Shown one piece after another: positions 4,520 through 59,300 of a stretch of 64,000 nucleotides of DNA. The DNA is from Podarcis muralis. Lineage: Eukaryota. Below the pieces are notes generated by a model. It saw nothing but the letters and a program-made list of their open reading frames with translations, had not been told where the DNA came from and made no database searches. Each line of letters starts with the position of its first letter. The stretch's first letter is position 1. The stretch lies in assembly GCF_964188315.1 (NCBI RefSeq), contig NC_135656.1:109492001-109556000 (forward strand), read 5' to 3'. The position numbers and the translations under genes are program-made.

Positions 4520-5448
4520 TATAGCTAGGACGGGCAGCTTTCTGGAAAGCAGGGAAGACAAAATGTATAATTCCCTCTCACTGCCCTCCCTCCTGAAACC
4601 TTCCCATATAGTGCAGCGAGGCTAGGGATGGTTTTTATTTTGTTTTTGTTTTAAAGTCATGGTGTGCATCTCCCAGCCTTAACCCCCATTCCCTCAGGGA
4701 TGCTGTGAATGATTGTGGACTCAAACTGCTAAATCTCCTGTCCCCATGTGATTTCCCATCCCTATCCATCCTCCACCTGCAATATTCCTCAGGACCTGGA
4801 AGCCAGTAGTCAAAGGTCCTTGTCCAGTATCAAAGGGAGTCTTGTCACAATCCTCCGGTGACCTTTTTGGAGAGGAAAACAACCCTGGTTAAAGGCTGCA
4901 CCTCTAGAACATCTTGCCATTTGAAGAAGCAGGCAAGTAGAATGCTGAGTGTCCTCTGGGCAGTCCCCTTTTTGCACACACACAGCTGTATACGTCCCAT
5001 TCACCAAGCAACCAACCCTAATTTAATACACTATAAAGACTGCGGTTTCTGTGTGACGTTTCTATTCCTCATCTGCCTTCTGCTTACCACTTTTCCGAGC
5101 TGTCGCCCTCCCCCTCGGTTTATGCTTCAAGGCCATAATTCTCTGAAATGGTGCAAGTTAAGTTTCTATTCTCTTCCTAGCTGCCCAGCCTAAATGTATT
5201 GTGCAGCAGGTACCTGACCCTGCTAGACCACATCCTTTGCTGATCGTGTTATCTCAAGTGGTCTCATCACACCAGAGCTGCTTGCTTCTCTCATTTTCCA
5301 GAGACCAGATCTTTCACTTACCACGTAGAAGAAAAAATGAGAGACACAATTTTGAAACATTCAATTAAGGAACCAGTTCAGTTGCTGGAGGTTTGAGACG
5401 GGTATGATTTCAGAATTGGTGCGGTATCTAATTGTACGACCCTCCAGG

Positions 5449-25062: not shown

Positions 25063-26438
25063 TGTGCATACAGCTCCATTGGATGTGTGTCGCAGATGTC
25101 GTACAGGATGGCTGCTACGGGACTGTACGCAAATGTTCAGGAGAATTGAAACAAGAAGAGCAGAGGCAGCTTCCATGTAGGCACAACCCCTGGCCGTGTG
25201 CGTGATATTCCGTTCCACCTTAAGAATAGGCATGATTGTTTTATGTCACATGTCTGTTTACACTCCAGCACAGCTTGCTGGGAACTTCCGATTGTGTATA
25301 GCTTTTGCTTCCGGCTTGCTTTGGACAAGAAGGGGAGAAGACATGTTTTCCTTTTGTCCTGATGTATGCTGAATAAATTGCTTGTAAATATGCTCAACAC
25401 AGCCTCTCCCTGCCACTTCTGTTGCACAGTGTTATTTACTCTTCTGAGTGTGCGTGCTCAGCTTCTGAAGGCTTCTGAAGCTAGGGTCGCAGCTTATGCT
25501 CATCCAAGAACTGGAGACCGCCTGGCACAGCAGCGAGTGGGCTGGGGCCAGCTGGGGGCCTGCCAATTGCCCCCGATTCCTTTGGCTGCATCCCAACAAA
25601 TACATAGTGTATTGTCAATAATTGGTAATACTTGGTGTGGACCCCCCCCCCCAAGTTGCTGCAACCTCTGCAAAGAGGACAGACCTAAGAATGACTGCTT
25701 AGATGCAAGGCTAGTGTGCATGGGTATTCAGAGCCATGGAAACTACTGTTAAGTGTCAGCTTGGACTATAAAGGGTGAACTATCTGCACATGGCTAGGGA
25801 GTGCCCTTGACTTTAGACTACAATGCCCACCAGCCAAGACAGCCTGGCCAATAGTCAGAGATGTAGTTCAGCAAAAAAACTGGAGAATAATGAGCTGCCT
25901 GCAGCTCCACTTAACTTTAGTCCATTTTCATCATCTCTTCAATTGTCCCAAGGGAAAGCATGGCATAAAGCTGTGCAAACAGGTTTTCTCCTTCCCAGCG
26001 CCTGTGAATGTGCCGCAGAGAGTATGCAAAGAGAAGGCCATACGTCCCCTGCAATTATTGAAATCACCATCATTGATGTGTGTTCCTGTGACCAAGGTCC
26101 CATAAGTTATTTTTACCCAGATGTCACTTTGGGATGAATAATAATAATAATAACCCTGAATCATTGATCATTTATTCCCCAAATCTGGAAAGAGAGCAGC
26201 ATAAATATATAAATATACTGAAGTAATGAGGGTGAGGGCTGAGATTTAGCCTGTCGGTCTGATGTTTGTATCTTCTTTTCCACGGAAGCCAGGCTTGGGG
26301 TCTTCCTCTGAGAAGCCAGACACAGGATGAGGCTTGCAAGACTGTCGCGGTGTTTTCCTGGCAAATTTCTCTGCCAGTGCATGGACTGGGTATATTGCAG
26401 AGTTAACTGAAGGAAGGTGTCTCTTCCTCGTGTTTAAA

Positions 26439-29400: not shown

Positions 29401-30833
29401 GAGAGAGGGAGAGAGGGGTTTCTTGTTGTCTCACACTACTTTCGTTCACTTAGGGCTCATCCCCATTTACCTTTTTGCCCAGCGCTTTCTTTGCAGAGGT
29501 CAGAGTCCCTTTTTTGCCCTGAATTGGAACAAGTGGCAACTTGGGTTTTCTGCCATTTGCTCTGATTCAGTGGTAAAAGACAGGAGGTTGCAAGGAAAGC
29601 ACTGGAGGGCAAGGGGACGCTTAGACCTGTGTTTAGAAATGCAACACAAAATGAGCCTTTGGCCATCTCAAGCCGCTTGCCGCAGCAAACTGTCCCAATA
29701 AGGAGAGACTGTAGCTCAGTAACAGAGAATCCCAACATTGAAATCCTGGAATTTCCAGGTAAATATCTTCAGGCAATCAGGTGGTGCATCAGTTTCCATT
29801 AAAGGAATGGAGGTGAGGCGGGGAATTAAGATTAGGATGGAAGAAGGAAGGAATGTGATTCATTGACCCATAGTACACATGTTGACATTTTATCTCTCTC
29901 TTTCTAGCTTCACCCTTTTCTGAGAAGGCTCCACTTCAACAGTGCTACCATAGATGAGAGGTATTTTGATGAGGACAGGGAGCTGGTGGCTGACTATGAT
30001 ATTGTGAATTTGGTTGCATTTCCTAACCAATCTGCCATAAGAGTGAAAGTTGGGAAGCTGGAGAGGCAAGCGTCTTCCGGTCTAGAGCTAACTATTCACG
30101 AGGAAGTCATTGTGTGGCCCAGTTGGTTCAATCAGGTGAGGAATCTATTCATAGAATCTTAGAAACCTAGAGTTGGAAGGGACCTGCGGGTTGTCTTGTC
30201 CAACCCCCTGCAATGCAGGAATCTCAGCTAAAGCATCCATGACAGATGGCCACCCAACCTATTCATAATTTACAAGCTGGCGTAATGTAGTAGTGAGCTT
30301 TGAGCCTGGAAGTCTCCTGTTCAAATTAGCAAATTACAATATAGCTGGTCTCAGCCTCAATCTCTCCTTGGTTGTTTAGAGTCAGGTAGGTAGCCGTGTT
30401 GGTCTGACGCAGTCGATAGATATACAGTATAAAAAAGAGACCAGCTAATTTTGTTCTTGGCATGCATACAAAAGCTTATACCCAGAACAAACTTAGTTGG
30501 TCTCTAAAGTGCTACTGGACAATTTTTTTATTTATATATATATATTGGTTGTTTAGAGATCAGGGATGGGAAGATGATCCACAGTTGTTCTGCAAGGAAT
30601 GGACACATGAAAACAGAATGGTATAGTACCTACAGAAATCCCTCAGACAGGTTTTTCCTTTCTTGATTCTCTTCAGACACGGCCCCATTCTACTTGTACA
30701 GAAAGCTGCCAATCTGGATACAGCAAGATCGTGCCAGAAGGCCAACCAATTTGCTGCTATGATTGTGCCCCGTGCAGACAAGGAACCATTTCTACTCATA
30801 CTGGTAAATGGGTTTGAAGGAACAGAAGATCCG

Positions 30834-30870
<37 letters not shown>

Positions 30871-32122
30871 AAGGAGCAGGTTCAGGATGAAATGGTCATG
30901 TTTGGTCTGAACTGAAATTTTGCAAACCAAGTAAGTTCAGCTTTGTTGAATTCTGGCCCAGAATTTCAAGAGGCACATTTCAATTTAATTTGGAGTTCTG
31001 GTGAATCCATTCTAGGCAAGCAGTCTTCCTAGTGCATCGCTTAAGAGTGTTGCTCTAAGTAGGCTCAGGTTACAGCTTGTTCATCTAAAATGACTAAAAA
31101 TCCTTAGCAACAGGAACGCAGAAACAAAGAAAATCGTCAAACCATTAATTCTAGCATGCGGGGGGCTACCCAAATTGTATAATTTGGCATCTCAATGATT
31201 GGTATTATTCATTGTATTATAATTTGGCATTGTTATAATGAGGCTTTTGTTGGATTGTTGTAATTGAAAACTAATAAAAAATATTATGAAAATGAATAAA
31301 TAAAAACCCTTAGCAACAGCAGTACCTCGATATCTGCCTAATAAGCCACAAACACTGCCTCCATATTTTGCTTACTAACTTTATAGATGTACAACTTACT
31401 TTTCTAAAATTGAAAGCTAAGAATTTGAGCCCTCTGTGGCATGGGGGAGTGGACATAAGTATGAACTAAAAATCATTCAAAATTCTGCCTGAAATGTATT
31501 TAATTTACCTGTTGTTCACCAGCAATTATGGGAGCAACCTTCCACTGTTTCCTAAACATTTTTTAATTATTTCAGTCACGTTTGTTCAGCTGAACTAGGT
31601 AATTACAAGTACTAATCATGGTGCTAGACACCTCAACATTAACACCATTATCTAATGAGTAACTATTTCTCCAGGAATTTAACTATGCTAGTGATTCCCT
31701 AGATCTCAAAGATCTCAAAAGTGATAATCTAAACATACACACCTTTCTCAACCATTCCTCACAAGGCGTGGTTTCCAGACCCTGATCATATTGTGCACCC
31801 TCCTCTGCACACATTCCAGCTTCTCAATATCCTTCTTAAATTGTGATCCCAGAACTGGACACGGTATTCCAGTTTTGGGCTGACCAAAGCAGAATAGAGT
31901 AGTACTATTATTTCCCTTCATCTGGACCAGGGGTCAGCAAACTTTTTCAGCAGGGGGCCAGTCCACTGTCCCTCAGACCTTTTGGGGGGCCAGATTTTTT
32001 TGGGGGGGGGAAATGAACAAATTCTTATGCCCCACAAATAATCCAGTGATGCATTTTAAATAAAAGCACACATTCTACTCATGTAAAACACTAGGCAGGC
32101 CCCACAAATAACCCAGAGATGA

Positions 32123-32174
<52 letters not shown>

Positions 32175-33130
32175 TGAAATCATAGGGCTTATTTCTTTCA
32201 GATGCAGATCATTGCCACCAGTGCCCAGAAGATAAATACCCAAACAATGAGAGGGATCAATGTTTTCCCAAAACCATAGTCTTCCTCTCCTATGAAGAAC
32301 CTCTGGGGATTATCCTGGCTTTCTTTGCCTTGTTCTTGTGTTTCATCACAGCTTCTGTTCTCGGAATCTTTATTAAATACCAAGGCACTCCAATAGTTAA
32401 AGCAAACCATCAAAGCCTCACGTACATCCTCCTTGTTTCTCTTCTGTTTAGTTTATTATCTTCCTTTCTATTCCTTGGCCAGCCTCAAAAGCTCAACTGC
32501 ATTCTCCGTGTAATAGCTTTCAGCATAAGCATCTCAGTCACCCTCTCTTCTATTCTGGCAAAAATGACCACTGTGCTGTTGGCATTCATGGCCACAAAGC
32601 CAGGGAACAGCGTCAGCAAATGGGTGGGAAGGAGTTTGCCAAATGCCATCGTCCTTTTCTGTTCCCTCGTTCAGTTTGTAATCTGCATGGTCTTCACTGG
32701 AATATCTCCCCCCTTCCCAGAATTTGGCAAGGATTCTGCAGCTGGACAGATAGTATTGCAATGCAATGAAGGTTCTGCCACTATATTTTATTCTATCTTT
32801 CTCTACATAGCCCTTCTGGGTACTGCCTCTTTTGGTGTTGCTTTCTTAACCATGAAACTACCATGGGGTTTCCAAGAAACCAAGTATATCACTTTGATCA
32901 TGCTAATGCTTGGCTGGGTTTGGGTCTTCACTTTGCCAGTCTTTGCAGGCACCAAAGGAAAAAACATGGCAGCTTTGCAAGTCTATTCCATCTTGACTTC
33001 CAGTGGTGGGTTATTGGGTTACATCTTCCTTCCCAAATGCTACATCCTTGTAATGAGGCCTGACCTGAATACAAAGGAGCACCTAATGATGAAAAGGAAG
33101 AAAAAAAGGGGCGTTGTGTTGGATGTATAG
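26439..33130 (+). CDS. Vmn2r: Vomeronasal type-2 receptor B, intact, 869 aa with proximal terminal exon 6a; join(26439..26635,27540..27831,28487..29323,29908..30135,30677..30803,32202..33130)
   Basis: Same six-exon architecture (197/292/837/228/127/929 = 2610 nt), all GT-AG and in frame. The 7TM is atypical ([18 protein letters not shown]). Confidence 0.93.
30382..30544 (+). mobile_element. Degenerate copy of the same Penelope-like family with an inverted terminal segment; ribozyme core destroyed
   Basis: 14-bp TSD TTGGTTGTTTAGAG (30368-30381, 30545-30558). Shares ccagaacaaacttagttggtctctaaagtgctactgg with the 47744 element. Inverted repeat at 30437-30460 / 30482-30504. Confidence 0.6.
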
Positions 33131-33221
33131 TTCAGCCACATTTCAGCAGCCATTTTATATATACATATTCTTAAAAAGTATCAGAGCGGTTTACAACAGT
33201 CATATGTAAATACTTACAAGG

Positions 33222-33764
33222 CTCCTTTCTCTCCTGCTTTCCTTTTTGTCCTCCCTTCTTTCCATTGGCCAGCCTCAAAAGGTCACCTGCCTTCTCCGTC
33301 AAACCATCTTCAGCACCATCTTCTCAGTCACCGTCTCTTCTGTGCTGGCAAAAACTATAACTGTGGTTTTGGCATTCATGGCCACAAAACCAGGGAACGG
33401 CATTAGCAAGTGGGTGGGAAAGAGTCTGGCGAATGGTATTGTCCTCTTTCGTTCTGCCTTTCAGTTTGGCATCTGTATTGCCTGGATTGGAATATATCCC
33501 CCCTTCCCAGAACTGGACATGGATTCCCAAGTCACACAGACAGTTCTGCAATGCAATGAAGGGTCCACCACCATGTTTTACTCTGCCCTTGGCTACATGG
33601 GCCTTCTAGCTGCCATCTCTTTTACTGTGGCTTTCCTAGCCAGGAAACTCCCTGGCGGTTTCAACGAAGCCAAGTTTATCACCTTCAGCATGCTGGTCTT
33701 TTGCAGTGTTTGGGTCTCCTTTGTGCCTACTTACTTGAGCACCAAGGGGAAATACATGGTGGCT
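33222..33764 (+). pseudogene. Orphan fragment of a canonical V2R exon 6 (TM2 to TM6-7 loop), truncated at both ends
   Basis: ORF 33246..33944 matches V2R-A exon 6 almost residue for residue up to KGKYMVA, then runs into an L2 fragment. No acceptor and no TM1. Confidence 0.85.
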
Positions 33765-34098
33765 CCACCCCCATCGCTCATTGCAGACACTGAGGTCCAG
33801 CTCCGAGGGCCTTCTGGCAGTTCCTTCACTGTGATTAGTGAGGTTACAGGAAAGCAGGCAGAGGGCCTTCTCGGTAGTGGCGCCCGCCCTGTGGAATGCC
33901 CTCTCGTCAGATGTCAAGGAAATAGACAACTATCTGACTTTTAGAAGAAATCTGAAGGCAGCCCTGTTTAGGGAAGTTTTTAATGTTTGATGTTTTATCA
34001 TTTTTTTAATATTCTGTTGCCCAGAGTAACTGGGGAAACCCAGCCAGATGGGCGGGGTATAAATAATAAATTTGATTGATTGATTGATTGATTGATTG
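33765..34098 (+). mobile_element. L2 LINE 3' fragment (others at about 6760-6995 +, 21715-22130 -, 51185-51500 -, 58340-58720 -)
   Basis: RAF.VVAP.LW..LP..VKEI motif in related copies; AATAAA followed by a microsatellite tail. Confidence 0.8.
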
Positions 34099-38963: not shown

Positions 38964-39489
38964 TCCCACACCTATAAATTGGGGTTTACATTAATAGAAG
39001 TGACCCTGATTCAACACAGAGATATGCTCCGTGTGTTTATTTCAGCCCTCTGCTGCAAACATGTTTTCTCCATCTGTGCATGTGCTGCAAAGAGAATGAA
39101 CGAAGAGATGGTTTCATGTCCCCTGCAATTATCAAAATCAATGTGATTGATAAGTGTTCCTGTGGCCAAAGTCCCATAAGACTCCCGCCACCCCCAGGTG
39201 TCACTTTTGAGACCAGTAATAAAAATAGTAATAATCAGAACCCAGCAATTTCTTGCACCAAATTTGAAGAGAGCTAATGAGAACGAGAGCTGAGAGTTAG
39301 ACAATCAGAGCTGGTCTGTCAGTTAAATGCTTGAATGTGTCTCCATTAGCACTGAAGCCAAACTCTTAATCTGTGAACTCAGTCAAGGTGGTTGCATTTC
39401 TTTCCTGCCACATATCTCTGTCCGTCCACTGACTGGGTATATTCTAAAGCCAATTGAATAAAGGCGCCACTTGCTTCATTGTGCCTAAA

Positions 39490-42400
39490 ATGACCCTACT
39501 GCTCATATTGCTTCATTTGCTCTTTGGGGTAGTGATGAATATAGAGATAGATCTCTCAGACCTACAGACACCTCCAAATAATTATTACAGTCCAGGAGAT
39601 TACCTCATCGCCGGAGTTATACCCGTGAGAACGGCAGTGTATCCAACACACACTTTCAAGTCTGACCCTGCTCATGACTTCCAACCGTAAGTGCTATTTG
39701 CTATCAAGTATTGGTTGTCCTCAGACGCGGGTGGCACTGTGGGTTAAACCACAGAGCCTAGGACTTGCCGATCAGAAGGTCGGCAGTTCGAATCCCTGTG
39801 ACAGGGTGAGCTCCCAATGCTCGGTCCCAGCTCCTGTCAACCTAGCAGTTTGAAAGCACATCAAAGTGCAAGTAGATAAACAGGTACCACTCCGGCGGGA
39901 AGGTAAACAGCATTTCCGTGCGCTGCTCTGGTTCGCCAGAAGCGGCTTAGTCATGCTGGCCACATGACCCGGAAGCTGTACGCCGGCTCCCTCGGCCAAT
40001 AAAGCGAGATGAGCATTGCAACCCCAGAGTCGGTCACGACTGGACTTAATGGTCAGGGGTCCCTTTACCTTTACCTTATCGGTTGTCCTCAGACAATTCT
40101 GATCTTCCCTGCTGCAGCCTATGCTCTGAATGAGCGGCAGAATCTTTAGCTCCCTATTTGATTCCAGTAAGGCTTTGGACAAAGTCCCTCAAGTCATGAT
40201 ACTCTTGCAAGGAAGCTGGTAAAATGTGGGTTGAACAAGGTAACTGTTAGGTGGATTTGAAGCTGGTTGACTGAGCGAAACTGAAAGAGTACTCCTTAAT
40301 GGTTCCTCGTCATCCCTGGAAAAAAGTGAGAAGTGGGACTACCCATTAAATTATAGAAAAAGATTACTCCTTATCCTCCAGGATCATTTTACATGGTGTT
40401 ATAAAAGGTAGCAGGATCCAATTCCTAGAATTTCATGTGAAAAGTTTTAATAATAGCAACCTGAATCACCAGGAAAAAAAATCAAATGCACTTTGACTAC
40501 CATAATATTCATTAACTTCTTGGCTTTTGCTTGGGAAAGAAAAGGATCTTTGGTCTGCTTCAGCAGAGCAATCCTTTCGCTCTTCAAAGAGAGGAATGTG
40601 AATGTCTGTAGGTCTCTTCTGTCTCCCCAAAAGCAGCAAATCCGCTGACATTTTAAATATTTGAAACCTGAAAAAGTTTAGATAAATTAAAATGAACATT
40701 GACTCCTAGAATATATATTTTTTAAACTTCTTACAACTTTTGTTGTAGTACCATCAGGGGAAGGGAGAAGAAATATGCAAAGCTCTGAAATATTTAAGTT
40801 AAATGTATACGACTTGTTGCCGGTCTATTAACTGAATTGATACTGTAAGTGAACTACTGAAACAAGCCATTGATATGTAAGTAAACTGTTGTGTTGTTTT
40901 GAATGCAATATGAGTAGATTTCACAGCAATCTTGCTGAAAATGCAAATTCATTATCTATAGTATATAATTCCTTTTTTGATTGCTACCGTTACAGGCTGC
41001 TTTTCTTCCCAACACATCCAAGGTTGTTTACAGTTACTGTATTTAAAATAACACATTGTCAAAGGAAAAGGGGGACAGGGTGGGAAAGGCGAAAATAAGT
41101 AAATTATGGTTCTGTGGCCACTGAAAGTGACTGTTCTGTGCTGGGATGAGCCAAAGGGCATTGAGTCCTAGCCAAGCCAGGGCTTTTATGCCTTCTTCCT
41201 ATTAGACATCTACATGATGGACCTTTGCTCTTATTCAGCATGACCCTTCTTATGTTCTTAAAAGACAGGCACCACAACTGAGAAGGCCCTGGTTCCCTGT
41301 AACCTCACTTCTCACAGTGAAGAAACTGCCAGAAGGCCCTCGGAGCTGGACCTCAGTGTTCCGGCAGAATCATGGAGGTGGAGATCTCTCCCCCCTCCCC
41401 CAGGAGACAAACCACTCAGATCTAAATGTCACTGACACCTTGAGTGGAAAAAGCAGGATTTGAACATAGTATTTCAGGTGGTGGATCATAGAATCACAGA
41501 ATCATAGAATCATAGAGTTGGAATAGACTACAAGGGCCATCGAGTCCAACCCCCTGCCAAGCAGGAAACACCATCAGAGCACTCCTGACATATGGTTGTC
41601 AAACCTCTGCTTAAAGACCTCCAAAGAAGGAGACTCCACCACACTCCTTGGCAGCAAATTCCACTGTCGAACAGCTCTTACTGTCAGGAAGTTCTTCCTA
41701 ATGTTTAGGTGGAATTTTCTTTCTTGTATTTGAACATAGTATTTCAGGTGGTAGATCATTTGAACATAGTATTTCAGGTGGTAGATCATAGAATCATAGA
41801 ATCATAGAGTTGGAAGAGACCACAAGGGCCATCGAGTCCAACCCCCTGCCAAGCAGGAAACACCATCAGAGCACTCCTGACATATGGTTGTCAAGCCTCT
41901 GCTTAAAGACCTCCAAAGAAGGAGACTCCACCACACTCCTTGGCAGCAAATTCCACTGTCGAACAGCTCTTACTGTCAGGAAGTTCTTCCTAATGTTTAG
42001 GTGGAATTTTCTTTCTTGTAGTTTGGATCCATTGCTCCGTGTCCGATGTTCAATTTGCTTTCCATTCCAGGATGCTGGGAAGGAATTATCAACACATCCT
42101 GGCCATCTTGTTTGCCATTAATGAGATTAATGAGAATCCCAAGCTCTTACCTAACATCACACTTGGCTACAGGATCTATGAAAATTGTTTCAGTGCCAGG
42201 ACAGCCTCTGAAGCCACCATAGAACTGTTGTCGACTAGACATTGGATGGTCCCTAATTTCAGGTGCGGAAGGCAAGGGAAGCTCCTGGCTGTTATTCAAG
42301 GAGGGGACTTTGAAACCTTTTTTCAAATGGCAACCATGCTAAATGTTTACGAGGTCCCTCAGGTAGGGAGAACAACATGGGCTGGGCAGAACAAATCCCA

Positions 42401-45400
42401 GACCAAACTCCTAAACTCTTGTGATTGAAAGTGGGGTAATGGGGATTGAAGAATGTGGAACCCTTTCCTCAGCTCAGGAGTTTGGGGCTGATGTCTGCCT
42501 CAGGAAAGTTGGGATAAACTTGTGACCTCACACTGCTTGCCTTCTGCAACTTTGCACCACAAGCAGGAAGATGACACCTGTATAGAAGAAATTTTTAAAA
42601 TTCCATCATAAAAAGCTTCTCATTATTGTTGTCGTTTTCTGAGGCCCAATAAGGTTTGGAGGAGAAGGGTAGGGAACAGGGATGTACTGGAAGGTGAACC
42701 TTCCAAAAGCAGTGCTGTCTTTTTCAGAGCAGGAGTTGTGGGACTCAGCTAGATTCATAGCTGTCAATTGTCCCTTATGTGGTGGGAAACTCCCTTATGC
42801 CAGCGCCGTGTCCTGCTGCTGTCCCTTATTGATGATGTCCCTTAAATTTCCCGGGTTTCATGCTCGCCCGGCTCGGGAGGGAAGCAGTGGCTCGGGGTCC
42901 TCCGTCACGAGAGAGCGCGCACGCACGAGCTGCCGCGTCTCCGTCTCTCCCTTTTCCCCCTCAGGGGTGCAGCGTGAGGAGACGGGTGGCGGCGGGTGGG
43001 CAGGCAGCCCCTCTCTTGCGAGACTTCCGCTGCGCTGCCAGGGGAAGCTGGAGGCGGCAGCAGCAGCAGCGGCAGCAGCTGAGGAGGCAGCCTGAGGGAG
43101 GAGGAAGAGGAGGGGATGGGGAGGGACGCAGAAGGGAGGCGCTTCAGCGGCCCCCGCAACAACCACATGCCAGGCTTGCGGGTGGCGTGGGCAAGAGTCT
43201 CTCTCCCTCCCTCACTCTCTCTCAGGCGGGGAAGGGCTGATGGAACTCCTCGCACCAGGATGACGGAAGCCCCGACGTGCTGCTTAGCATACCCTCCAAC
43301 TAGTGCAGCATCTTAATGTAGTGATTTCCCCCGCTGCATCCCTTTCATAACTCTATTTTTATAAATCATTTTTCCATCCATTGTTCAAATTTTTACTACA
43401 AGTTTTCTGTCAATCCTACCAATGTATGTAACTCTTTACAATAGCTTTTCAACTAAATTATAAACTTTCCCCATTCTTTATTAAAGAGGTCCTCTTCCTG
43501 GTTTCTAATTCTACCTGTAAGCTTTGCCATCTCAATGTCGTTCATCAGTTTTGTCTGCCACTCTTCTTTGGTGGGAGTTGAAGACCCTTAGGATCATCTA
43601 GTCCAACCCCCTGCAAAACCCAATCAGTCGCAGCAAAAGTAACATGGCTCCATCAGTGCCAGATTTCTGTATAAGCCAAGCAAAATCCCTTATTTTGGCT
43701 GCTGATCCCTTATTTTCGAGGCTGCTGGTCCCTTATTTTCAAATCTGTAAGTTGACAGCTATGGCTAGATTGGGGAAGAAAAAGTATTTCGTATGCGTTG
43801 TATATGCATTATAACACCGTGACACCAGATGGCGCTGTGGAGTTCCGTTTTCCCCAGTGTGATTTCTTACAACAAAGTTTGCAACGCATTTAACTGAAAC
43901 GCTTCTTTGATGTGTCTAGATCCAACCATGCTATCTCTTGTTCACCTTTTCTCTAAAGCGAAAAGTCCCAAATTCTGCAACCTTTCCCAATAGGGAGTTT
44001 CTCCATCCTCCTGTCAACCGATCTATAGCCTGGGTATAATTCCAATCTAACTCAGTGGGACTTGCCTCTGAATAGACATGTGTGAGACTGCTCTGTTAAG
44101 TGGAAAACATTTCAGACAAGCAACGCCTGAGCATTATTTCCAAACTAAGCATTGATTCCTTTCCTCCATACCAGCTCACATACGGCTTTGTAATCCATAC
44201 TATGAGTGATAAAACTCAGTTCCCCTCTTCCTACTGGATGAGTCCCAAGGCAGCTCCACAGTATATGGGCATCCTTCAGTTGCTGCTGCATTTCAGGTGG
44301 ACATGGGTCGGTCTCATTGCTCCAGACAATGATGGTGGAGATCTTTTCATGAGAACCATGAAGGCGATGGTCTTTGGGAGTGGCATTTGTTTAGCCTTCA
44401 CATATGCAATCCCACAATTTTCTATTGACCTCTTTGTTTCCAAACAAATACTTTTAAGGTTTTTAGGACATCTTATTCAGAGGAGAGCCAACGTGATCCT
44501 TTATTATGGGGATCCTGATTCAATGCTTCTGTTGCCACATGCGCTGTACAGAATTGAACTAAAAACCAATGCCCCGGTAGGGAAAGTTTGGATCGCTACA
44601 GCTCTGTGGGGCTTCACCTTAAGCGCATCTTTTGAGTACTGGGACATCGTATTCTTCCATGGGGCATTGTTCTTCAGCACCCAAACAAACAGAAGGTCAA
44701 AATCACAGGGCCTTTTTTTGACTCAAGATGAAGATTCCTTCAATCAGATTTGGTCAAAACCCTTTGATTGCTCTCATCCCAACCACAGATGGTCAAGGAA
44801 AACCTGGAGAAGATGCATGGGGAGGGAGAAATTGGAAGGTCTCCCTGTAGATTGGCTTGGGAAAGACATGTCTGCAGAGAGTTGCAATGTTTATAGTGCT
44901 GTCTATGTTGTAGCACATGCCTTCCATGCTCTGATCACATCTGTGTCCAGCCGCATGAGAACTACAGAAAAAGGCAGGCTGGATTTTCTGAACATAGAAG
45001 CATGGCAGGTGAGGGAGAGTGAAATCCGTTTACTACAGTTGCAATGGATGGACATTCTGCCCGTCTTCCCACACTCCTGCAGTCTTTTGGCCAGAAATCC
45101 TGCTTATGCACATATATTATCTCAGTTTAATCTATATCATGGGGTTGCTGAAAAGATTTAAAGGGGGGGGGGGATAGGGGAATGTACACAGCTCTGGGCT
45201 CCTGGGTAGAAAAGCAAAATAAAAGTATAGAATGTCTTCTTCTTTCTTCTTTGGTGATCACTCGTAGCTGAGTTATGTCTTCCATAAACACAGTTTTAAC
45301 AGTGAGTCTGTAAGTGACTGTGGAGGCCAATTCTGGATCCACCCGTCCTTCCACAGTGGGGACATAGGTTTCCAGGTGGGAGTTGATCACAGTGAGGGTT

Positions 45401-48400
45401 TGCCAAGCGTGCCTTCCTCTTAGCACATTTCTCCCTTGCCTCCTGAGTTTGAGTGTCTTCAAAGCCCATGACACCTTTGGTAAAGGCTGTTCTCCAATTG
45501 GAGCGCTCGCAGGCCATTGTTTCCCAGTTGTCGGTGTTTATACTACATTTTAAAAAGATTTTCCTTGAGAGAGTCTTTAAACCTCTTTTGTTGACCACCA
45601 GCTTTAAGCTTTCCATTTTTAGGTTCAGAATAGAGTAGCTGCTTTGGAAGACGATAATAATGCACAGATCATGTAGTGAAAATAAGCATATAAATAAAGG
45701 CCTATTTTTTTCTACTTGGAGCTTACATCCTTTTCTTTTGGGTTTCTGGGAGAGATACCTCCAATCTAGGAACCCACTTTTAAATTTATCCAACACTACA
45801 TCAGTTTCCGCCAAAGAAAAGAGGGTTGGGGGATGAAGACTCAGATGGAAGAAAGGATGAATCTAATTGGCCCATCTTGCAAATGTTGACATTCTCTTTT
45901 TATTTATTTTATTTTTTTATAAGATATTTATTGGTTTTTCCAGAAATTAATATAACATCAAAGTCACCCAATTACAAAAAATCACCAACATGAGGGAAAA
46001 AATACAAAAAGAAAAAATAGACAAACATACATACAAAAAGAAAAAAAAGACACAAAAACACATGTATAATTTCCTTCCCTTTTGTTCATACAACTTACTT
46101 TCCCGACTTCCTCATACCTCCCCTAACTGCATTCTATTCTCTAATTCATCCTCTTCAACAAATCCTTCCCCCAATTCCTGTTTAAGTCTTTGTTTTTTCT
46201 TTTCATTTTTACATAATCATTACAGCAATCAACCACTTAGTTTCCGAATCAAAATTGTCCTAACATTCCATAATTTTACAGTACTTCTTAAGATAGTCTT
46301 TAAATTTCTTCCAATCTTCTCCTGCTGTCTCTTTTCCCTGGTCTCGGATTCTGCCGGTCATTTCTGCCAATCAAATGTTGACATTCTCTCTCTCCCACAT
46401 CTAGCTCCACCCTTTTCTGAGAAGTCTCCACTTCAACAGTACTACCATGGATGAGGTGCATTTCGATGAGGACGGGGAATTAGTGGCCGACTATGATGTT
46501 GTGAATTTGGTCACATTTCCTAACGAATCAGCTGCAAGAGTGAAAGTTGGTAAACTGGAAACCCAAGCATCGTTTGGTCTAAAACTTACCATTCATGAGG
46601 AATCCACCGTGTGGCCCAGTTGGTTTAATCAGGTGGAGGATGTATTCATATTAATTCAGCAGTAGCTAGGAATGTGAACTGTGAGTCTGGAGGTCTCCAG
46701 TTCAAATACATTCAAAATAGCCAATATTTACCTCAAACTCAAGATTATAATGCTGGATCCCTGCAAGATCCTACTTAGATAGTGTATAAATGATGAATAA
46801 AAAGTTGGCCTTAGCCTGAACCTCTCATTTGAAGATAACAAGGCTGAAATACTTAGTATAGCCATATATACCATTCTGCAAAGCATGGACACATCACCAT
46901 AGAATGGTTTGGTACCTATAGACAAAACAGAAACTCACCAAACACTGTTTGTTTCCTTGATGCCTTTTTAGACAAGACCTCACTCTACCTGTACAGAAAG
47001 TTGCCAACCTGGATACAGCAAGGTGGTGCCAGAAGGACAGCCAATTTGCTGCTATAGTTGTGAACCTTGCGTAGACGGAACCATTTCCACTAACACAGGT
47101 AAATGGTATTGAAGAAACAAGAGGCCCTAGGAAACTGAGAAAGAGGGTCAGGATGAAAGTAGGCATGCTAGGTTTGAAATGAAATTTTGCAAAGGAAGTG
47201 TGTGGTGCTTTCCAAAATTAAGATGCAGATTCTTCACAACATTTCAAAATTATTATTATTTGGTTCTTGTGAATCTATTTCAGTGAAACAATTAGGCCAA
47301 CACACTGTTTGAGTGCACAGCTCCAAGCAGGCTCAAACTATAACCTCTTCCACTGCAGTGATTAAATGACTAATACTGTAAGCAGCACACCTCCTTATCT
47401 GCCTAATAAGCCATAGAACATTGACTCCAATTTTTGCTTTCCAACTTTTTTTTACATGACCAATTGACTTATTTTTTAAAAACAACAACAACAAAGGCTT
47501 GATACTTTGAGGCTTTTGGTGGGATGGAGGGATGAATCAGAGTATGAGCCAGAAAGCATTCAAAGTTTTATCTTCAAATGGACTTTATTCACCTTTGTCC
47601 ATGGCAATTATGGGAACTACTTTCAGGTGTCATTCAGAGATTTCTGATCTTTGTTCAACTGAACTAGTTAATTCCAAGCACTAATAATGGCCTATGAAGC
47701 TCAAAATCAACCCATTATCTGATGAATAACTATTTCTCCAGGAACAGATGTGGACTTCCATTTCATGCGGCTCAATGTGGTGCCTTCCATAGTTCCAGTT
47801 ACAGATGTGGACTTCCATTTCATGCGGCTCAATGTGGTATTTCAGTGTATCTGAAGAAGTGTGCATGCACACGAAAGCTCATACCAAGAACTGTGTATCT
47901 GAAGAAGTGTGCATGCACACGAAAGCTCATACCAAGAACTAACTTAGTTGGTCTTTAAGGTGCTACTGCAAGGAATTTTTTTATTTCTCCAGGACTTCAG
48001 CTTTGCATCTGATTCACAAGATTTGGCAGACTCCCACAGGCTTATTGCATGCTTGTTTGAGATGTTGCCTAAGAACTGCATTAAAAGGGAGAATGCTGAG
48101 TAAAAATATAATATAGGGGGGGGGGGGAAGAGAAAATCACATTGTGGTATGAAATTTCTGGAACACCTTGGAATATGATGTACTGAAATCATTTTTTCTA
48201 TCAGATGCAGATCATTGTCATCAGTGTCCAGAAGATCAATACTCAAACAACGAGAGGCATCGTTGTATCCCCAAGACCATAGTCTTCCTCTCCTATGAAG
48301 AACCCCTGGGGGTCACCTTGGCTTTCTTTGCCCTATTTTTGTGCCTAACCACAAGTACTATTTTGGGAATCTTCATTAAGTACCAGAGCACTCCACTTGT

Positions 48401-49109
48401 TAAAGCCAACAATCGAAACCTGACTTACATCCTCCTCGTTTCTCTCCTGCTTTCCTTTTTGTCCTCCTTTCTATTCATCGGCCAGCCTCAAAAGGTCACC
48501 TGCCTTCTCCGTCAAACTGCCTTCAGCATCATCTTCTCAATTGGCGTCTCTTCTGTGCTAGCAAAAACAACTACTGTGGTGCTTGCATTCTTGGCCACAA
48601 AACCAGGGAACAGCATCAGGAAATGGGTGGGGAAAAGTTTGGCAAACTCCATTGTCCTCTTCTGTTGCAGCATTCAGTTTGGCATCTGCATTACCTGGAT
48701 CGGAATGTATCCCCCCTTCCCAGAACTGGACATGGATTCCCAGGTCACACAGACAATTCTGCAGTGCAATGAAGGGTCCATCACTATGTTTTACTCTGCC
48801 CTTGGCTACATGGGCCTTCTGGCTGCCATCTCTTTTACTGTGGCTTTCCTAGCCAGGAAGCTCCCTGGCGGTTTCAACGAAGCCAAGTTTATCACCTTCA
48901 GCATGCTGGTGTTTTGCAGTGTTTGGGTCTCCTTTGTGCCAACTTACTTGAGCACCAAGGGGAAATACATGGTGGCTGTGCAGATCTTCTCCATCTTGGC
49001 TTCCAGTGGTGGGTTACTGGGCTGTATTTTCTTTCCCAAATGCTACATCATTGTCCTCAGGCCTGATTTGAATACAAAAGAGCACCTGATGTTGAAAAGA
49101 AAAGATTAG
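39490..49109 (+). CDS. Vmn2r: Vomeronasal type-2 receptor C, intact, 860 aa; join(39490..39686,42071..42362,44175..45008,46405..46632,46972..47098,48205..49109)
   Basis: Exons of 197/292/834/228/127/905 nt sum to 2583 nt, GT-AG, in frame, canonical 7TM. Confidence 0.95.
39724..40077 (+). mobile_element. Sauria SINE just after V2R-C exon 1
   Basis: 14-bp TSD GGTTGTCCTCAGAC. Confidence 0.9.
41457..42045 (-). mobile_element. Tandemly duplicated CR1 3' fragment
   Basis: Two copies of (CATAGAAT)n plus CR1 3' end, separated by duplicated 30-bp flank sequence. Confidence 0.85.
42756..43763. mobile_element. Non-autonomous hAT-type element with CpG-rich cargo and an L1 3' fragment
   Basis: TIRs CATAGCTGTCAA / TTGACAGCTATG; perfect 8-bp TSD GCTAGATT; subterminal TCCCTTAT repeats at both ends. 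Confidence 0.88.
45234..45620 (-). mobile_element. RTE-clade LINE 3' fragment
   Basis: [13 protein letters not shown] ... [22 protein letters not shown]-terminal zinc-finger-like end. Confidence 0.8.
47744..47981 (+). mobile_element. Short Penelope-like 3' fragment carrying the hammerhead pair
   Basis: 13-bp TSD TATTTCTCCAGGA (47731-47743, 47982-47994). The homologous site is empty in V2R-B (about 31665) and V2R-D (about 62710). A second internal duplication lies at about 47744-47838. Confidence 0.65.
47847..47932 (+). ncRNA. Two tandem minimal type I hammerhead ribozymes (47847-47884 and 47895-47932)
   Basis: Each copy reads GUAU-CUGAAGA-A-GUGUG(CAUG)CACAC-GAAAG-CUC/AUAC: full core, 5-bp stem II, 4-bp stem I (GUAU/AUAC), loopless palindromic stem III (AGCU). 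Exact 48-nt tandem unit at 47845-47892 and 47893-47940. Confidence 0.8.
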
Positions 49110-56395: not shown

Positions 56396-59300
56396 CTTTC
56401 GTAGATTTTCACGGGTACAGGAATGCAGGTTTTGGTGTCCTCGGGTGTCTTCCCGTGTAAAAGTTGGGGTGTCTAGGCGACGTTTCGACGAGGTCTCACT
56501 CGTCATCTTCAGGCTGGTGCTTTCGGCTTCTTGTTACTGGAACAGAGCAGGATCTCAGTGTTTGAGTTCCTATAAATACTGTTGAGGAGGTGTGTTGTAT
56601 AGCCTCCAATGTTCTGGGCAGAGAGGAAGTTCCCAGGCTAGTGTGCCTTTTCTTCTTTTGTTCCTTAATTGCTTGAGGGATATCTTGAGTGATTTCTTGA
56701 GTGATATCCTGAGTACCACTTAGGTGGGTCATTAGGTGTGGATTAGTTGCTAAAGCCTTTGTGTCTTGACCTCTTGAACTTTGTGAAGAGTTTTTCTGAG
56801 AAGATGGCTGTACTGCATTTAGTTGTGCTCTGGCTTGGCTTCGTGTATAGGGGCGAGCTGTGGTTTTGTGGCCTGTGCCAGCCAGATCTGTGTAGGGATT
56901 GCAGGGGGGTGCAGCATCCGGAGGTGCCACCATGGTTTGGCTACTGGATGGTGTCTGTAATTTATCTGTGGAGAGGGTCTGGGTTTGGGTCTGGTGTGGT
57001 TGATTGGTGATGGCGTTCTGTGTGCCTCTGGATCTGGTGTCAGTTTTTGTGGGGAGGGCTAATTTCCAGATGTCTGGCAAGCGGGATGTGTCGTCACGTT
57101 TGTTCATGTTGTGAGGGTGTTTCTCTATCTCGATGGCTTCCATGATTATTCTCTTGTGGTGATGTTCCATGTTAGAGAGCAATTTGGAATCTGCAAAATT
57201 AATTTCGTGTCCTGTTTCTTTCATGTGTTGGAAAAGAGAGGAAGTTTTTTCTTCTTTTTTGACGGCATTCTTGTGTTCTGCGATACGTGCATTTATTCGT
57301 CTGTTTGTTTGTCCAATGTACGTGGCTGGGCAGACTTTGCAGGGTATTTCATAGACCCCTTGGTTTTCCAACTGGATTTTATCCTTGGGGTTTCTGAGGA
57401 TATTGGCTATTTTTTGGTTGGCGCAAAAGGCTGTTTTGATATTGTGTTTATGGAGGATTTTGCTAATTTTATCTGTAGTGCCCTTGATATAAGGAAGGAG
57501 GGCCATGCCATTGTTTTCTTCTGTGTCTTGGTTTTTGGGGGGTGTTTCTTTTTGGATTAGCTTCGTAACCCTGTTTTGCTGGTATCCATTGGCAATTAAC
57601 ACATTTGAGAGATTCTGTAACTCAGTTGTCAAGTGGTCTTTGTCAGCCAGGCGTTTGGTTCTGGAGATGAGAGTCTTGGCTACGGAGTTTATTTGTGCAG
57701 GGTGGTGGTGTGATTGTGCATGTAAGTAGCGGTTGGTGTGTGTTTTTTTCCGGTAGATAGTGTGTCCTAGGGAGCCATCAGGTTTTTTGTAGATTAGGAC
57801 GTCAAGGAAGGGAAGTTGGTTGTTGGCTTCTATTTCCATAGTGAATTGTATTTTGGGGTGTAGGCTGTTGAGATGTGTGAGGAAGCTGTCCAGTTTTTCC
57901 TTCCCGTGTGGCCAAATTACAAAGCTGAAGATGACGAGTGAGACCTCGTCGAAACGTCGCCTAGACACCCCAACTTTTACACGGGAAGACACCCGAGGAC
58001 ACCAAAACCTGCATATATATATATATATATATACAAGCTGAAAATACCCTAATTCAGTGCTTTTTTCCTTGGGGGTACTCAAGGGTATGCAGTACCGGCA
58101 CCTTTTTGGCTAGAAGAAAAGCACTGCCCTAACTGCGTGCAGTTAACTGCAGTTAGTCGCTGAGCCACCAATGCTCAGCCTAACCTACTCCATAGGGCTG
58201 CTGTGAAGGTAAAAGCAGGAAGGGGAAAACAGTGTGCCAAATCTGACTCCCTGCGACCCCATGGTGCTGTTGTGCGCTCATCACCTGTGTCCAACAGCAT
58301 GGTGTTGTTGTTGCTGAATGCCAAGTTGCTCATAATAATAATAATAATTTATTTATACCCCCACCCATCTGGCTGGGTTTCCCCAGCCACTCTGGGCAGC
58401 TTCCAACAAAATATTAAAATACAATAGTCTGTTAAACATTAAAAGCTTCCCTAAACAGGGCTGCCTTCAGATGTCTTCTAAAAGTCTGGTAGTTGTTTAT
58501 CTCTTTGACATCTGATGGGTGGGCGTTCCACAGGGCAGGCGCCACTACTGAGAAGGTCCTCTGTCTGGTTCCCTGTAATCTTGCTTCTCGCCAGAAGGCC
58601 CTCGGCACTGGACATCAGTGTCCGGGCTGAACGATGAGGGTGGAGACACTCCTTCAGGTATACTGGGCCGAGGCCGTTTAGGTCTTTAAAGGTCAGCACT
58701 TTGAATTGTGCTCAGAAACGTACTCATTTGTGCTCATTCATTATTCAATTATGGGTGAGGGCACCAAGCTGGGGTGCATTACTGAGACTTGGGTTGGTGC
58801 AACTACATGACTACCTGGGTGGAGAAGAAAGCTTGCCATGGTTCACAGGAGTTTGTTCTCCCTCACCAGGAAACCTCTCTTTACCTTGGAGCAGAAGTAG
58901 AGGGCCTGCATCTACTGCTGGGTCTGAGAGACAGGTCAGGGCCGCTGTTGGTGTACCACCCACTCATCTGCCCAAAAGCTTCTCTGACATGGTTTCCTTT
59001 TTCTTTGCTTTTCCTTTTTCCTCCATGTTTTTATTTATACTCTTCAAGTTTATGCATTTCATTAGTTTTACAATCACTTTAACATTTCAAAGTTTGACTT
59101 CCTTCGCCCTCTTCCTGTAGTTCCTTAAATTTATTTTTTAACAACTTCTGCATATTCAAATTCATTTAATTTGCTCATTTAATTATCTACTTCAAATATA
59201 TACTCTTAAGAAACTGCAGGTTATTATAATAATCCTGCTAATGTTTTTATCTGTTTGCAATTTATCTGTAAATATTCAATAAACCATTTCCATTCTTTTA

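What the first reader, a model, noticed from the sequence alone, without database searches (positions are those of the whole stretch)
47845..47940. Tandem pair of intact minimal hammerhead ribozymes, sense strand, in the last intron of an intact V2R gene
Seen: an exact 48-nt duplication in which each unit has the complete hammerhead core (CUGAAGA ... GAAA), a 5-bp stem II, a 4-bp stem I and a loopless AG/CU stem III before the CUC site. The insert has a 13-bp TSD and is absent at the homologous site of V2R-B and V2R-D. Known: minimal type I hammerheads of Penelope-like elements and non-LTR retrozymes have a palindromic stem III, fold poorly as monomers and cleave as double hammerheads from tandem copies. 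Inferred: AGCU(1) can pair with AGCU(2), and AUAC 47881-84 with GUAU 47895-98 around a 10-nt loop, giving a compact cis double hammerhead. Cleavage after C47880 and C47928 would cut V2R-C pre-mRNA between exon 5 and the 7TM exon and could release a 48-nt RNA, a possible ribozyme-based damper on one receptor of the cluster. The 48-nt spacing is far shorter than typical retrozyme monomers.
Basis: partly seen in the sequence, partly recalled or inferred. Interest (0 to 1): 0.9.

Follow-up and report, generated by a model that had tools for sequence, protein, structure and literature searches.

The report
Young Penelope-derived insert with duplicated hammerhead
The two hammerhead ribozyme motifs are really there, but they belong to a recent, not yet fixed insertion of a very abundant lizard Penelope-like retroelement fragment, and nothing indicates that they cut or regulate the V2R gene they landed in.

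Summary
There is an exact 48-nt x2 tandem at 47845-47940, and each unit carries a complete minimal type-I hammerhead. The 238-bp insert has a 13-bp TSD. It lies in sense in intron 5, the last intron, of a V2R gene with six open exons, and it is absent from two paralogous sites.

The motif matches the published minimal hammerhead of Penelope-like elements (PLEs) nearly feature for feature. The hammerhead-plus-tail module is a massively repeated family, with thousands of contigs per DNA run. The scan's unchecked notes list many other intronic sense copies in this genome.

One individual carries the empty site with the 13 shared letters, so the insertion is young and polymorphic. The tandem junction words occur in only two runs, so the duplication is real but private to this insertion.

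Folding argues against the proposed cis double hammerhead. It scores -10.3 kcal/mol, against an MFE of -33.5 for a fold dominated by a 14-bp duplex between the two palindromic stem II segments (probability 0.996).

The four RNA runs contained no V2R-C reads and showed no read ends at the cut sites in family transcripts. Published work shows that PLE hammerheads are slow or protein-assisted and that slow intronic ribozymes do not disturb splicing.

Verdict: an ordinary new member of a known kind, of low interest.

The parts
47731..47743 (.). Left copy of the 13-bp target site duplication TATTTCTCCAGGA
   Evidence: the repeat finder family D4. The paralogous empty sites carry it once. The empty-allele contig joins 47730 to 47982 with 13 shared letters.
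47744..47981 (+). 238-bp retroelement insert: two copies of an upstream segment, two hammerhead units and a tail ending in a T run
   Evidence: It is bounded by the TSD. It is skipped (251 = 238+13) in a contig of run X2. It is absent at the paralogous sites.
47745..47782 (+). Upstream segment A, copy 1. The exact second copy is at 47803-47840. Its first part resembles the family's sequence just upstream of the hammerhead.
   Evidence: blastn self-hit with 100% identity over 37-38 nt. Family D2. Local alignment to the family upstream consensus taken from the loose ends. Depth is 14,000-34,000 against about 20 in the flanks.
47845..47892 (+). Hammerhead unit 1 (hammerhead proper 47847-47884; predicted cut after C47880)
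   Evidence: TRF, sequence and motif search.
47893..47940 (+). Hammerhead unit 2 (hammerhead proper 47895-47932; predicted cut after C47928). Its start coincides with a recurrent 5' end of other genomic copies.
   Evidence: TRF. Loose ends with unrelated flanks at 47892/47894/47895.
47859..47920 (+). The two 14-nt palindromes GUGUGCAUGCACAC (stem II plus loop of each unit, at 47859-47872 and 47907-47920). They pair with each other as a 14-bp duplex in the predicted MFE fold.
   Evidence: Inverted repeat I1, 100% complementary. MFE -33.5 kcal/mol and pair probability 0.996.
47941..47981 (+). Family tail ending in a run of T. This is the 3' end of the insert.
   Evidence: It is shared with the degenerate copy at 30460-30517 and with thousands of contigs. 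Loose ends lie behind 47982 and 47986.
47982..47994 (.). Right copy of the TSD. Together with the T run it reads as a pyrimidine tract plus AG.
   Evidence: and sequence.
46972..47098 (+). V2R-C exon 5 (cysteine-rich linker), flanked by AG and GT
   Evidence: Translation with the CC..C..C motif and sequence.
47099..48204 (+). V2R-C intron 5 (1106 nt). The insert begins 645 nt after the donor and ends 223 nt before the acceptor.
   Evidence: The phase fits: G from exon 5 plus AT from exon 6 gives Asp.
48205..49109 (+). V2R-C exon 6, the 7TM exon, up to the stop codon
   Evidence: ORF 48168-49109. Pfam 7tm_3 E=1.6e-81.

Best explanation
This is a recent, still polymorphic 238-bp retro-insertion derived from the hammerhead-bearing terminal module of a Penelope-like element family that is extremely abundant in this lizard genome. 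It entered intron 5 of V2R-C in sense orientation by target-primed reverse transcription and left a 13-bp duplication of an AT-rich target. The exact 48-nt tandem is a private rearrangement of this one insertion. Unit 2 plus the tail equals the usual short family copy. Unit 1 and the two copies of the upstream segment were most likely added by template switching or slippage of the reverse transcriptase at the usual 5' end (inferred). Both hammerhead motifs are intact in sequence because the copy is young, not because the host selected them. In the V2R-C pre-mRNA the pair is predicted to fold mainly into a 14-bp hairpin between the two palindromic stem II segments rather than into a double hammerhead. 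Any cleavage is expected to be slow and without effect on splicing (inferred from folding and from published work).
For: The motif matches the published PLE minimal hammerhead descriptor: an unpaired base between A9 and G10.1, a G10.1-C11.1 pair, palindromic 15.2-16.2, no loop III and a helix I of 4-5 bp (against PMC4209133). The hammerhead-plus-tail part attracts 4,100-6,050 contigs per DNA run, with summed depth around 10^6 against about 20 for the flanks. It also attracts 470-890 RNA reads per run, all from other copies. A degenerate palindromic copy lies at 30.4 kb, and a PLE ORF with its own hammerheads lies at 56.5-58 kb. Run X2 holds the empty allele: it joins 47730 to 47982, skips 251 and shares 13 letters. 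Apart from 47632 (a difference also seen in X1) and 48016, its listed differences lie at 48114-48144, in and just after the poly-G tract, whereas the paralogs are only 83-85% alike. All repeats are perfect: TSD 13/13, units 48/48, segment A 38/38. Junction-spanning words occur only in X25 and X3, and not in the other DNA runs that hold the flanks. Loose ends at 47892-47895 with unrelated flanks show that other copies begin where unit 2 begins. On folding, the double hammerhead scores -10.3, two hairpins -11.0 and the monomer folds -13.6, while the MFE is -33.5. The stem III pair probability is about 3e-12. In the four RNA runs, no place shows many reads beginning or ending. This matches the same negative result for the Anolis PAc element, whose hammerhead is protein-assisted and not needed for insertion (PMC11167929). 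PLE hammerheads cleave very slowly even as dimers (PMC4209133; PMC6765202). Slow ribozymes in introns leave splicing intact (PMC2995048; PMC10919898). Here the acceptor lies only 276 nt past the second cut site.
Against: No cleavage assay exists for this family or for this tandem. Nearest-neighbour folding ignores hammerhead tertiary contacts and co-transcriptional kinetics, so local hairpins could form first and permit a transient double hammerhead. The RNA runs contained no V2R-C transcripts, so nothing was learned about this locus in vivo. Logan contigs and a two-word index are weak evidence that the tandem is absent elsewhere. The scan's unchecked notes mention other multi-hammerhead insertions in this genome. 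No autonomous PLE with exactly this hammerhead was seen in the window, so the link to PLEs rests on motif type, family behaviour and the literature.
Confidence: 0.78

Rival explanations
1. The tandem does fold, at least transiently during transcription, into a cis double hammerhead and cleaves a measurable fraction of V2R-C pre-mRNA. This releases a 48-nt RNA but has no consequence for mRNA output, because the exons stay tethered and the intron is discarded anyway.
For: All core positions are intact and the nested double-hammerhead pairing can be drawn. Tandem copies raise cleavage of short-stem-III hammerheads in amphibian retrozymes (PMC7229834). Stem II hairpins form locally before the second unit is made (inference).
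Against: The active fold gains nothing over bare hairpins and loses 23 kcal/mol to the MFE fold with the inter-unit duplex. The palindromic CAUG loops offer a kissing route into that duplex (inference). PLE minimal hammerheads are slow even as dimers (PMC4209133; PMC6765202). Family transcripts show no read ends at the cut sites.
Confidence: 0.12
2. One reading: the pair is a ribozyme-based damper that cuts V2R-C pre-mRNA between exon 5 and the 7TM exon and lowers expression of this one receptor.
For: The pair lies in sense in the last intron of an apparently intact gene. There is a precedent for an intronic ribozyme tuning its host mRNA, the CPEB3 HDV-like ribozyme (PMC10919898).
Against: The insertion is polymorphic and is absent from the paralogs, so it is not a conserved regulatory device. 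The acceptor is 276 nt beyond the second cut site, which Pol II covers in seconds, so only a very fast ribozyme could interfere. Fast ribozymes block splicing but slow hammerheads do not (PMC2995048; PMC10919898). Folding disfavours the active form. The scan's unchecked notes list many such sense intronic copies in this genome.
Confidence: 0.04
3. If the insert affects V2R-C at all, it does so through splicing signals and not catalysis. The T run of the tail now precedes the right TSD copy, giving a long pyrimidine tract plus AG at 47975-47991. This could act as a cryptic 3' splice site 213 nt upstream of the true one, and it would read into a stop after six codons.
For: The sequence reads TTTTTTTATTTCTCCAG|GA. 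In the empty sites the same AG is preceded by purine-rich sequence. Reading on from exon 5 phase 1 gives GGA CTT CAG CTT TGC ATC TGA.
Against: No splice-site scoring and no RNA data were available. Branch point and exon definition are unknown. Most intronic pyrimidine-AG strings are never used.
Confidence: 0.05
4. The 48-nt duplication is an assembly artefact, and the real locus has a single unit.
For: Perfect short tandems inside high-copy repeats are a typical place for assembly errors. No listed Logan contig spans both units.
Against: The 31-letter words that span the unit 1/unit 2 junction are held by two runs from different studies, one of them not the presumed source sample.
Confidence: 0.01

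Closest known systems
Minimal hammerhead ribozymes of Penelope-like elements (min-HHR; Cervera and de la Pena 2014, PMC4209133; Lunse, Weinberg and Breaker 2017, not readable here)
   Same: Both are type I. Both have the CUGANGA and GAAA cores, an unpaired base between A9 and G10.1, a G10.1-C11.1 pair, a helix I of 4-5 bp, no loop III and a palindromic 15.x-16.x, so that only a dimer can build helix III. Both occur in huge copy numbers, mostly as dispersed single motifs.
   Different: Helix II here is 5 bp with a palindromic CAUG loop, which makes a 14-nt perfect palindrome. The described families have 7-8 bp. Here two copies lie 48 nt apart in one transcript, whereas the published cases are about 3 kb apart, or 100-700 bp apart on opposite strands.
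PAc, the Poseidon-type PLE of Anolis carolinensis (PMC11167929)
   Same: Both are lizard PLEs with a hammerhead at the pLTR-ORF junction. Copies end at internal reverse-transcription start sites with an optional short extension, and here other copies end at two nearby sites (47982 and 47986). The target is AT-rich. RNA-seq shows no ends at the cut site.
   Different: The PAc-type hammerhead, with its ATG at the start of stem II, is the other motif in this window (56479-56512 and 57925-57958). The family studied here has a different stem II and stem III, and its ATG runs into a stop after nine codons.
Metazoan non-LTR retrozymes (PMC7229834; bioRxiv 10.64898/2026.07.22.740005)
   Same: Both have head-to-tail repeats that each carry a type I hammerhead acting as a dimer, and both have a PLE origin.
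   Different: The unit here is 48 nt, against 170-400 nt (or 51-972 bp for consensus lengths). There are only two units. They are embedded in a single TSD-flanked insert. The junction is not found in other individuals, and there is no evidence of circular or monomeric RNA.
Intronic self-cleaving ribozymes with host function (CPEB3 HDV-like ribozyme, PMC10919898; from my own knowledge also the amniote HH9/HH10 intronic hammerheads)
   Same: Both are sense-strand ribozyme motifs inside an intron of a protein-coding gene.
   Different: Those ribozymes are conserved across species, fold as monomers and cleave at measured rates matched to transcription. This one is a polymorphic repeat copy that has no monomeric helix III.

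Membership tests
PLE minimal hammerhead (min-HHR) | Conserved core C3-A9 (CUGANGA), G12A13A14, A15.1/U16.1 and H17 | tested here: met
   CUGAAGA, GAA, A..U of AGCU and C17 are present in both units.
PLE minimal hammerhead (min-HHR) | Unpaired nucleotide between A9 and G10.1, and a G10.1-C11.1 pair | tested here: met
   An extra A lies at 47858/47906. G47859 pairs with C47872. The feature is listed in PMC4209133.
PLE minimal hammerhead (min-HHR) | No loop III and a palindromic 15.2-16.2, so that helix III forms only between two copies | tested here: met
   AGCU is followed directly by C17. A 4-bp AGCU/AGCU helix can be drawn in a nested structure.
PLE minimal hammerhead (min-HHR) | Short helix I (4-5 bp) and long helix II (7-8 bp) | tested here: inconclusive
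   Helix I is 4 bp, which meets the feature. Helix II is only 5 bp plus a 4-nt loop.
PLE minimal hammerhead (min-HHR) | Located in the terminal repeat of a Penelope-like element or its non-autonomous derivatives | tested here: inconclusive
   The family behaves as a retroposon: it has a TSD, very many copies, 5' truncations and two nearby 3' ends. No RT/GIY-YIG ORF joined to this exact hammerhead was seen. The PLE ORF in the window carries another hammerhead type.
PLE minimal hammerhead (min-HHR) | Self-cleavage as a dimer | not testable with these tools
   Only folding energies were available. The double hammerhead scores -10.3 against an MFE of -33.5 kcal/mol. No read ends lie at the cut sites in four RNA runs.
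Non-LTR retrozyme | A family of head-to-tail repeats whose unit carries one hammerhead, recurring at many loci | tested here: not met
   There are two units only. The junction words are held by just two runs, while the other DNA runs that hold the flanks lack them. This is weak evidence, from 2 sampled words.
Non-LTR retrozyme | Unit length within the described range | tested here: not met
   The unit is 48 nt. The described range is 170-400 nt (PMC7229834) or 51-972 bp (bioRxiv 10.64898/2026.07.22.740005), so this unit falls just below the minimum.
Non-LTR retrozyme | Expressed as linear and circular monomer RNAs | tested here: inconclusive
   Raw RNA reads show no joints or ends that define a 48-nt monomer. 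Standard libraries would hardly capture a 48-nt RNA.
Rfam hammerhead families (Hammerhead_1, _3, _II, HH9, HH10) | Score at or above the family's gathering threshold | tested here: not met
   No hammerhead match was found, even at E up to 10 on 47600-48200.
Host-recruited intronic regulatory ribozyme | Fixed and conserved at the orthologous site | tested here: not met
   Run X2 of the same species label holds the empty allele. The insert is absent at the paralogous sites.

The most novel reading that the evidence does not exclude
The 48-nt spacing could make the smallest natural self-contained double hammerhead. On this reading it folds co-transcriptionally before the stem II palindromes can pair with each other, cuts twice and frees a 48-nt RNA shorter than any described retrozyme unit. 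In carriers of the insertion allele it would measurably lower V2R-C mRNA, which would make it a segregating ribozyme-caused expression polymorphism of a chemoreceptor.
Probability: 0.04. Interest if true: 0.6.

Novelty: new member of a known kind. Interest (0 to 1): 0.2.

Why it matters
As it stands, the finding matters little. It is one more copy of a known ribozyme-bearing retroelement family in a genome that holds very many copies, and the scan's notes already flag many of them, some in introns and in sense. Two points have modest value. First, the insertion is polymorphic, so carriers and non-carriers offer a natural test of whether a tandem minimal hammerhead in an intron affects its host gene. 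Second, because stem II plus its loop is a perfect palindrome in this family, placing two copies close together favours an inactive inter-copy duplex. That is a caution against reading every tandem pair of minimal hammerheads as an active dimer.

Tried and rejected
Rfam, at gathering threshold on the whole window and at E up to 10 on 47600-48200, gave no hammerhead family. It gave only chance-level hits: TB10Cs5H3 at 27 bits against a gathering score of 45, and mir-3149 caused by the two palindromes.

A full-text search for the family's sequence strings found no paper. The paper of Lunse et al. (PMC5785218) is not held, so its kinetic data could not be used.

The four raw-read runs have no reads on V2R-C exons 4-6, so exon 5-6 junction use and cleavage ends at this locus remain unknown.

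I considered a domain-swapped dimer in which the 14-bp inter-unit duplex serves as a shared stem II while AGCU/AGCU serves as stem III. I rejected it because it is pseudoknotted. It would also need two helices that leave the hammerhead junction roughly coaxially in opposite directions to end at the same second junction (reasoning from the known hammerhead fold, not computed).

I considered that the empty-site contig of X2 might come from a paralog. I rejected this because, apart from 47632 and 48016, its listed differences lie at 48114-48144, in and just after the poly-G tract. The in-window paralogs are only 83-85% identical in this intron. The 95%-alike empty contigs of X5 and X8 were not used as evidence of polymorphism, since they may be another species or a paralog.

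Copy number was not estimated, because the tool states that summed contig depth is not a copy number.
Full report
**1. What is in the sequence**

The stretch 47845-47940 is an exact two-fold repeat of a 48-nt unit (TRF: period 48, 2.0 copies, 100% matches; the repeat finder D1). Each unit, read, is a complete minimal type I hammerhead:
- The 5' strand of stem I is GUAU.
- The core is CUGAAGA, followed by one unpaired A.
- Stem II is GUGUG/CACAC around the loop CAUG.
- GAA follows, then the palindrome AGCU (positions 15.1-16.1 with no loop), then C17.
- The 3' strand of stem I is AUAC.

The predicted scissile bonds follow C47880 and C47928. A loose hammerhead pattern ending in GAAAGCTC occurs only at these two places in 64 kb, against 0.03 expected by chance. 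Rfam's hammerhead models do not score it, even at E up to 10. That is expected for a motif that lacks loop III.

**2. The insert and its host gene**

The repeat is part of a 238-bp insert (47744-47981) flanked by a perfect 13-bp duplication, TATTTCTCCAGGA. Two paralogous V2R introns in the window, near 31.6 kb and 62.7 kb, align on both sides, have the target once and lack the insert.

The insert is built as follows:
- a 38-nt segment (47745-47782);
- a 20-nt spacer;
- the same segment again (47803-47840);
- TTTCA;
- two hammerhead units;
- a 41-nt tail ending in a run of T.

The host gene has these features:
- Exon 5 is 46972-47098, between AG and GT, and encodes the cysteine-rich linker.
- Exon 6 begins at 48205 after a pyrimidine tract and AG. 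The phase fits: G plus AT gives Asp.
- Exon 6 encodes a 7tm_3 domain with E=1.6e-81.
- Open pieces for exons 1-4 lie at 39454-39690, 42039-42428, 44100-45161 and 46447-46665.

The insert therefore lies in sense in the 1106-nt last intron of an apparently intact V2R gene, 223 nt upstream of the acceptor.

**3. What kind of element it is**

The motif agrees nearly point by point with the minimal hammerhead that Cervera and de la Pena defined for Penelope-like elements (PMC4209133). The shared features are:
- the extra base between A9 and G10.1;
- the G10.1-C11.1 pair;
- the 4-5 bp helix I;
- the absent loop III;
- the palindromic 15.2-16.2.

Only helix II, at 5 bp, is shorter than their 7-8 bp.

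Laying Logan contigs of four DNA runs on 47600-48200 shows that the hammerhead-plus-tail part is an enormous repeat family. Between 4,100 and 6,050 contigs were laid per run. Summed depth is around 10^6, against about 20 in the single-copy flanks. The upstream segment is also repeated, but about a hundred times less.

Raw RNA reads from four runs carry the family as well. Their common upstream sequence ends in CTTCTGTTTCA directly before a single hammerhead unit. In some transcripts the sequence continues past the T run. That continuation matches, in reverse complement, part of a degenerate palindromic copy of the same family at 30385-30530.

The window also holds a Penelope-type ORF at 56496-58082 on the minus strand, with a weak GIY-YIG match. 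It carries a second hammerhead type, whose ATG sits at the start of stem II as described for the Anolis element PAc (PMC11167929).

The scan's notes for this genome hold 214 entries with the word hammerhead. They include other sense intronic copies, one of them in another V2R intron 5, and multi-hammerhead inserts. These notes are unchecked leads, but they agree with the copy-number picture.

**4. Age, polymorphism and origin of the tandem**

In run X2, from another sample under the same species label, one contig joins 47730 directly to 47982. It skips 251 letters, with 13 letters fitting either side, which is exactly the empty site.

That contig's listed differences are 47632 (a difference also seen in X1), 48016, and a cluster at 48114-48144, in and just after the poly-G tract. 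The paralogs in the window are only 83-85% identical here. The contig is therefore an allele and not a paralog. In run X1 the filled form is covered without any difference on both junctions.

The insertion is thus not fixed. This fits its perfect TSD, units and segment copies.

All 31-letter words of 47863-47922 span the unit 1/unit 2 junction. The two sampled words are held by only two runs: the presumed source sample, and a run of another study. The many other DNA runs that carry the flanks and the family do not hold them.

The duplication is therefore real, but appears private to this insertion. This is weak evidence, because only two words were sampled.

Other genomic copies begin, next to unrelated flanks, at 47892-47895, which is exactly where unit 2 begins. 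Unit 2 plus the tail thus equals a usual short copy. I infer that the reverse transcriptase reached that usual 5' end and then switched template, or slipped, adding unit 1 and the upstream segments. This step is inference.

Other copies end at two nearby sites (loose ends behind 47982 and 47986). This recalls the two adjacent internal start sites of PAc, and the AT-rich target fits its endonuclease preference (PMC11167929).

**5. Would the pair act as a double hammerhead?**

The following pairings give a nested structure with two proper three-way junctions:
- outer GUAU 47847-50 with AUAC 47929-32;
- AGCU 47876-79 with AGCU 47924-27;
- inner AUAC 47881-84 with GUAU 47895-98 around a 10-nt loop;
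- the two stem II hairpins.

Energetically the structure is poor. The predicted free energies compare as follows:

| Structure | Free energy (kcal/mol) |
|---|---|
| Double hammerhead | -10.3 |
| The two stem II hairpins alone | -11.0 |
| Two monomer-type folds | -13.6 |
| 14-bp inter-unit duplex alone | -25.2 |
| Minimum free energy fold | -33.5 |

The MFE fold arises because stem II plus its loop is a perfect 14-nt palindrome, so the two copies pair with each other over 14 bp. In the ensemble that duplex has probability 0.996, and the stem III pairs have a probability of about 3e-12. The same duplex appears when 350 nt of context are folded.

The model ignores tertiary contacts and folding order, so a transient active form cannot be excluded. 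However, the self-complementary CAUG loops offer an easy route from two hairpins to the long duplex (inference).

**6. Would cleavage matter?**

Published work argues that it would not:
- PLE minimal hammerheads show no cleavage as single motifs. As dimers or trimers their activity is low, and appears mostly at non-physiological Mg2+ (PMC4209133; review PMC6765202).
- The Anolis PAc hammerhead behaves as a protein-assisted ribozyme. It is dispensable for insertion, and leaves no read ends at its cut site in RNA-seq (PMC11167929).
- Introns cut by a slow hammerhead are spliced normally, and only fast ribozymes abort splicing (Dye et al. 2006 and Fong et al. 2009, as reported in PMC2995048, and PMC10919898).
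- The CPEB3 ribozyme, with a half-life of 2-3 min, matters because about 10 kb of intron follow it. Here only 276 nt separate the second cut site from the acceptor, so a ribozyme would need to act within seconds (inference from those papers).

My own RNA test was uninformative for the locus, since there were no reads on V2R-C exons 4-6 in the four runs. For the family it was negative: about 500-900 reads per run cross the motif, and no place shows many reads beginning or ending.

**7. Comparison with known systems, and verdict**

The element works like, and by sequence features belongs to, the PLE minimal hammerheads. Its tandem form resembles a two-unit non-LTR retrozyme. However, it fails that family's tests of recurrence and unit length: 48 nt against 51-972 bp in the widest survey (bioRxiv 10.64898/2026.07.22.740005) and 170-400 nt in PMC7229834. 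It is not a conserved host ribozyme of the CPEB3 or HH9/HH10 type, because it is polymorphic.

The most likely account is a neutral, young retro-insertion whose intact ribozyme motifs reflect its youth (confidence 0.78). The rivals are:
- low-level cleavage without consequence (0.12);
- an effect through the new pyrimidine-AG string at 47975-47991 (0.05);
- an assembly artefact (0.01).

Novelty: a new member of a known kind, with an unusually short private duplication. Interest: 0.2. The scan's notes had already flagged this kind of element many times on other DNA of the same genome.

Noticed in passing
window 56479-58082: A Penelope-type ORF (56496-58082, minus strand, 528 aa, weak GIY-YIG match E=5e-4, below the Pfam cut-off) has two identical 34-nt hammerheads of a second type (CTGAAGATGACGAG...GAAACGTC, stem III ACGU). 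One lies on the minus strand at 56512-56479 and overlaps the end of the ORF. The other lies inverted on the plus strand at 57925-57958. The ATG sits at the start of stem II, as described for Anolis PAc.
   Followed up: partly
window 30385-30530: A degenerate copy of the same family lies in the V2R-B region. The tail and T run are 88% alike, the hammerhead core is decayed, and it is preceded by an inverted copy of the tail and of the family's downstream sequence. This gives a palindromic, hairpin-like insert.
   Followed up: partly
window 47975-47994: The T run of the insert followed by the right TSD copy reads TTTTTTTATTTCTCCAG|GA, a strong-looking 3' splice site string 213 nt upstream of the true acceptor. 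Spliced to exon 5, it would meet a stop after six codons.
   Followed up: no
window 48114-48144: The poly-G tract and its surroundings differ between individuals (G to T changes, deletions of 1, 6 and 10 letters), so this is a variable low-complexity spot in intron 5.
   Followed up: no
window 47969: This copy has C where about 97-99% of family RNA reads have G. Other common family variants lie at 47936, 47940 and 47955. Variants at 47872/47873 and 47920/47921 look like CpG decay that hits C11.1 and G12 of the hammerhead.
   Followed up: no
window 47737-47838: The duplication of the upstream segment extends 5-7 nt into the left TSD (TCCAGGA... against TCCAGTT...). This may be chance, or it may mean that target sequence took part in the rearrangement during integration.
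   Followed up: no
window 47733-47801 minus strand: A below-threshold Rfam hit to a trypanosomatid H/ACA snoRNA model (27 bits against a gathering score of 45) lies on the repeated upstream segment. I judge it to be chance.
   Followed up: no
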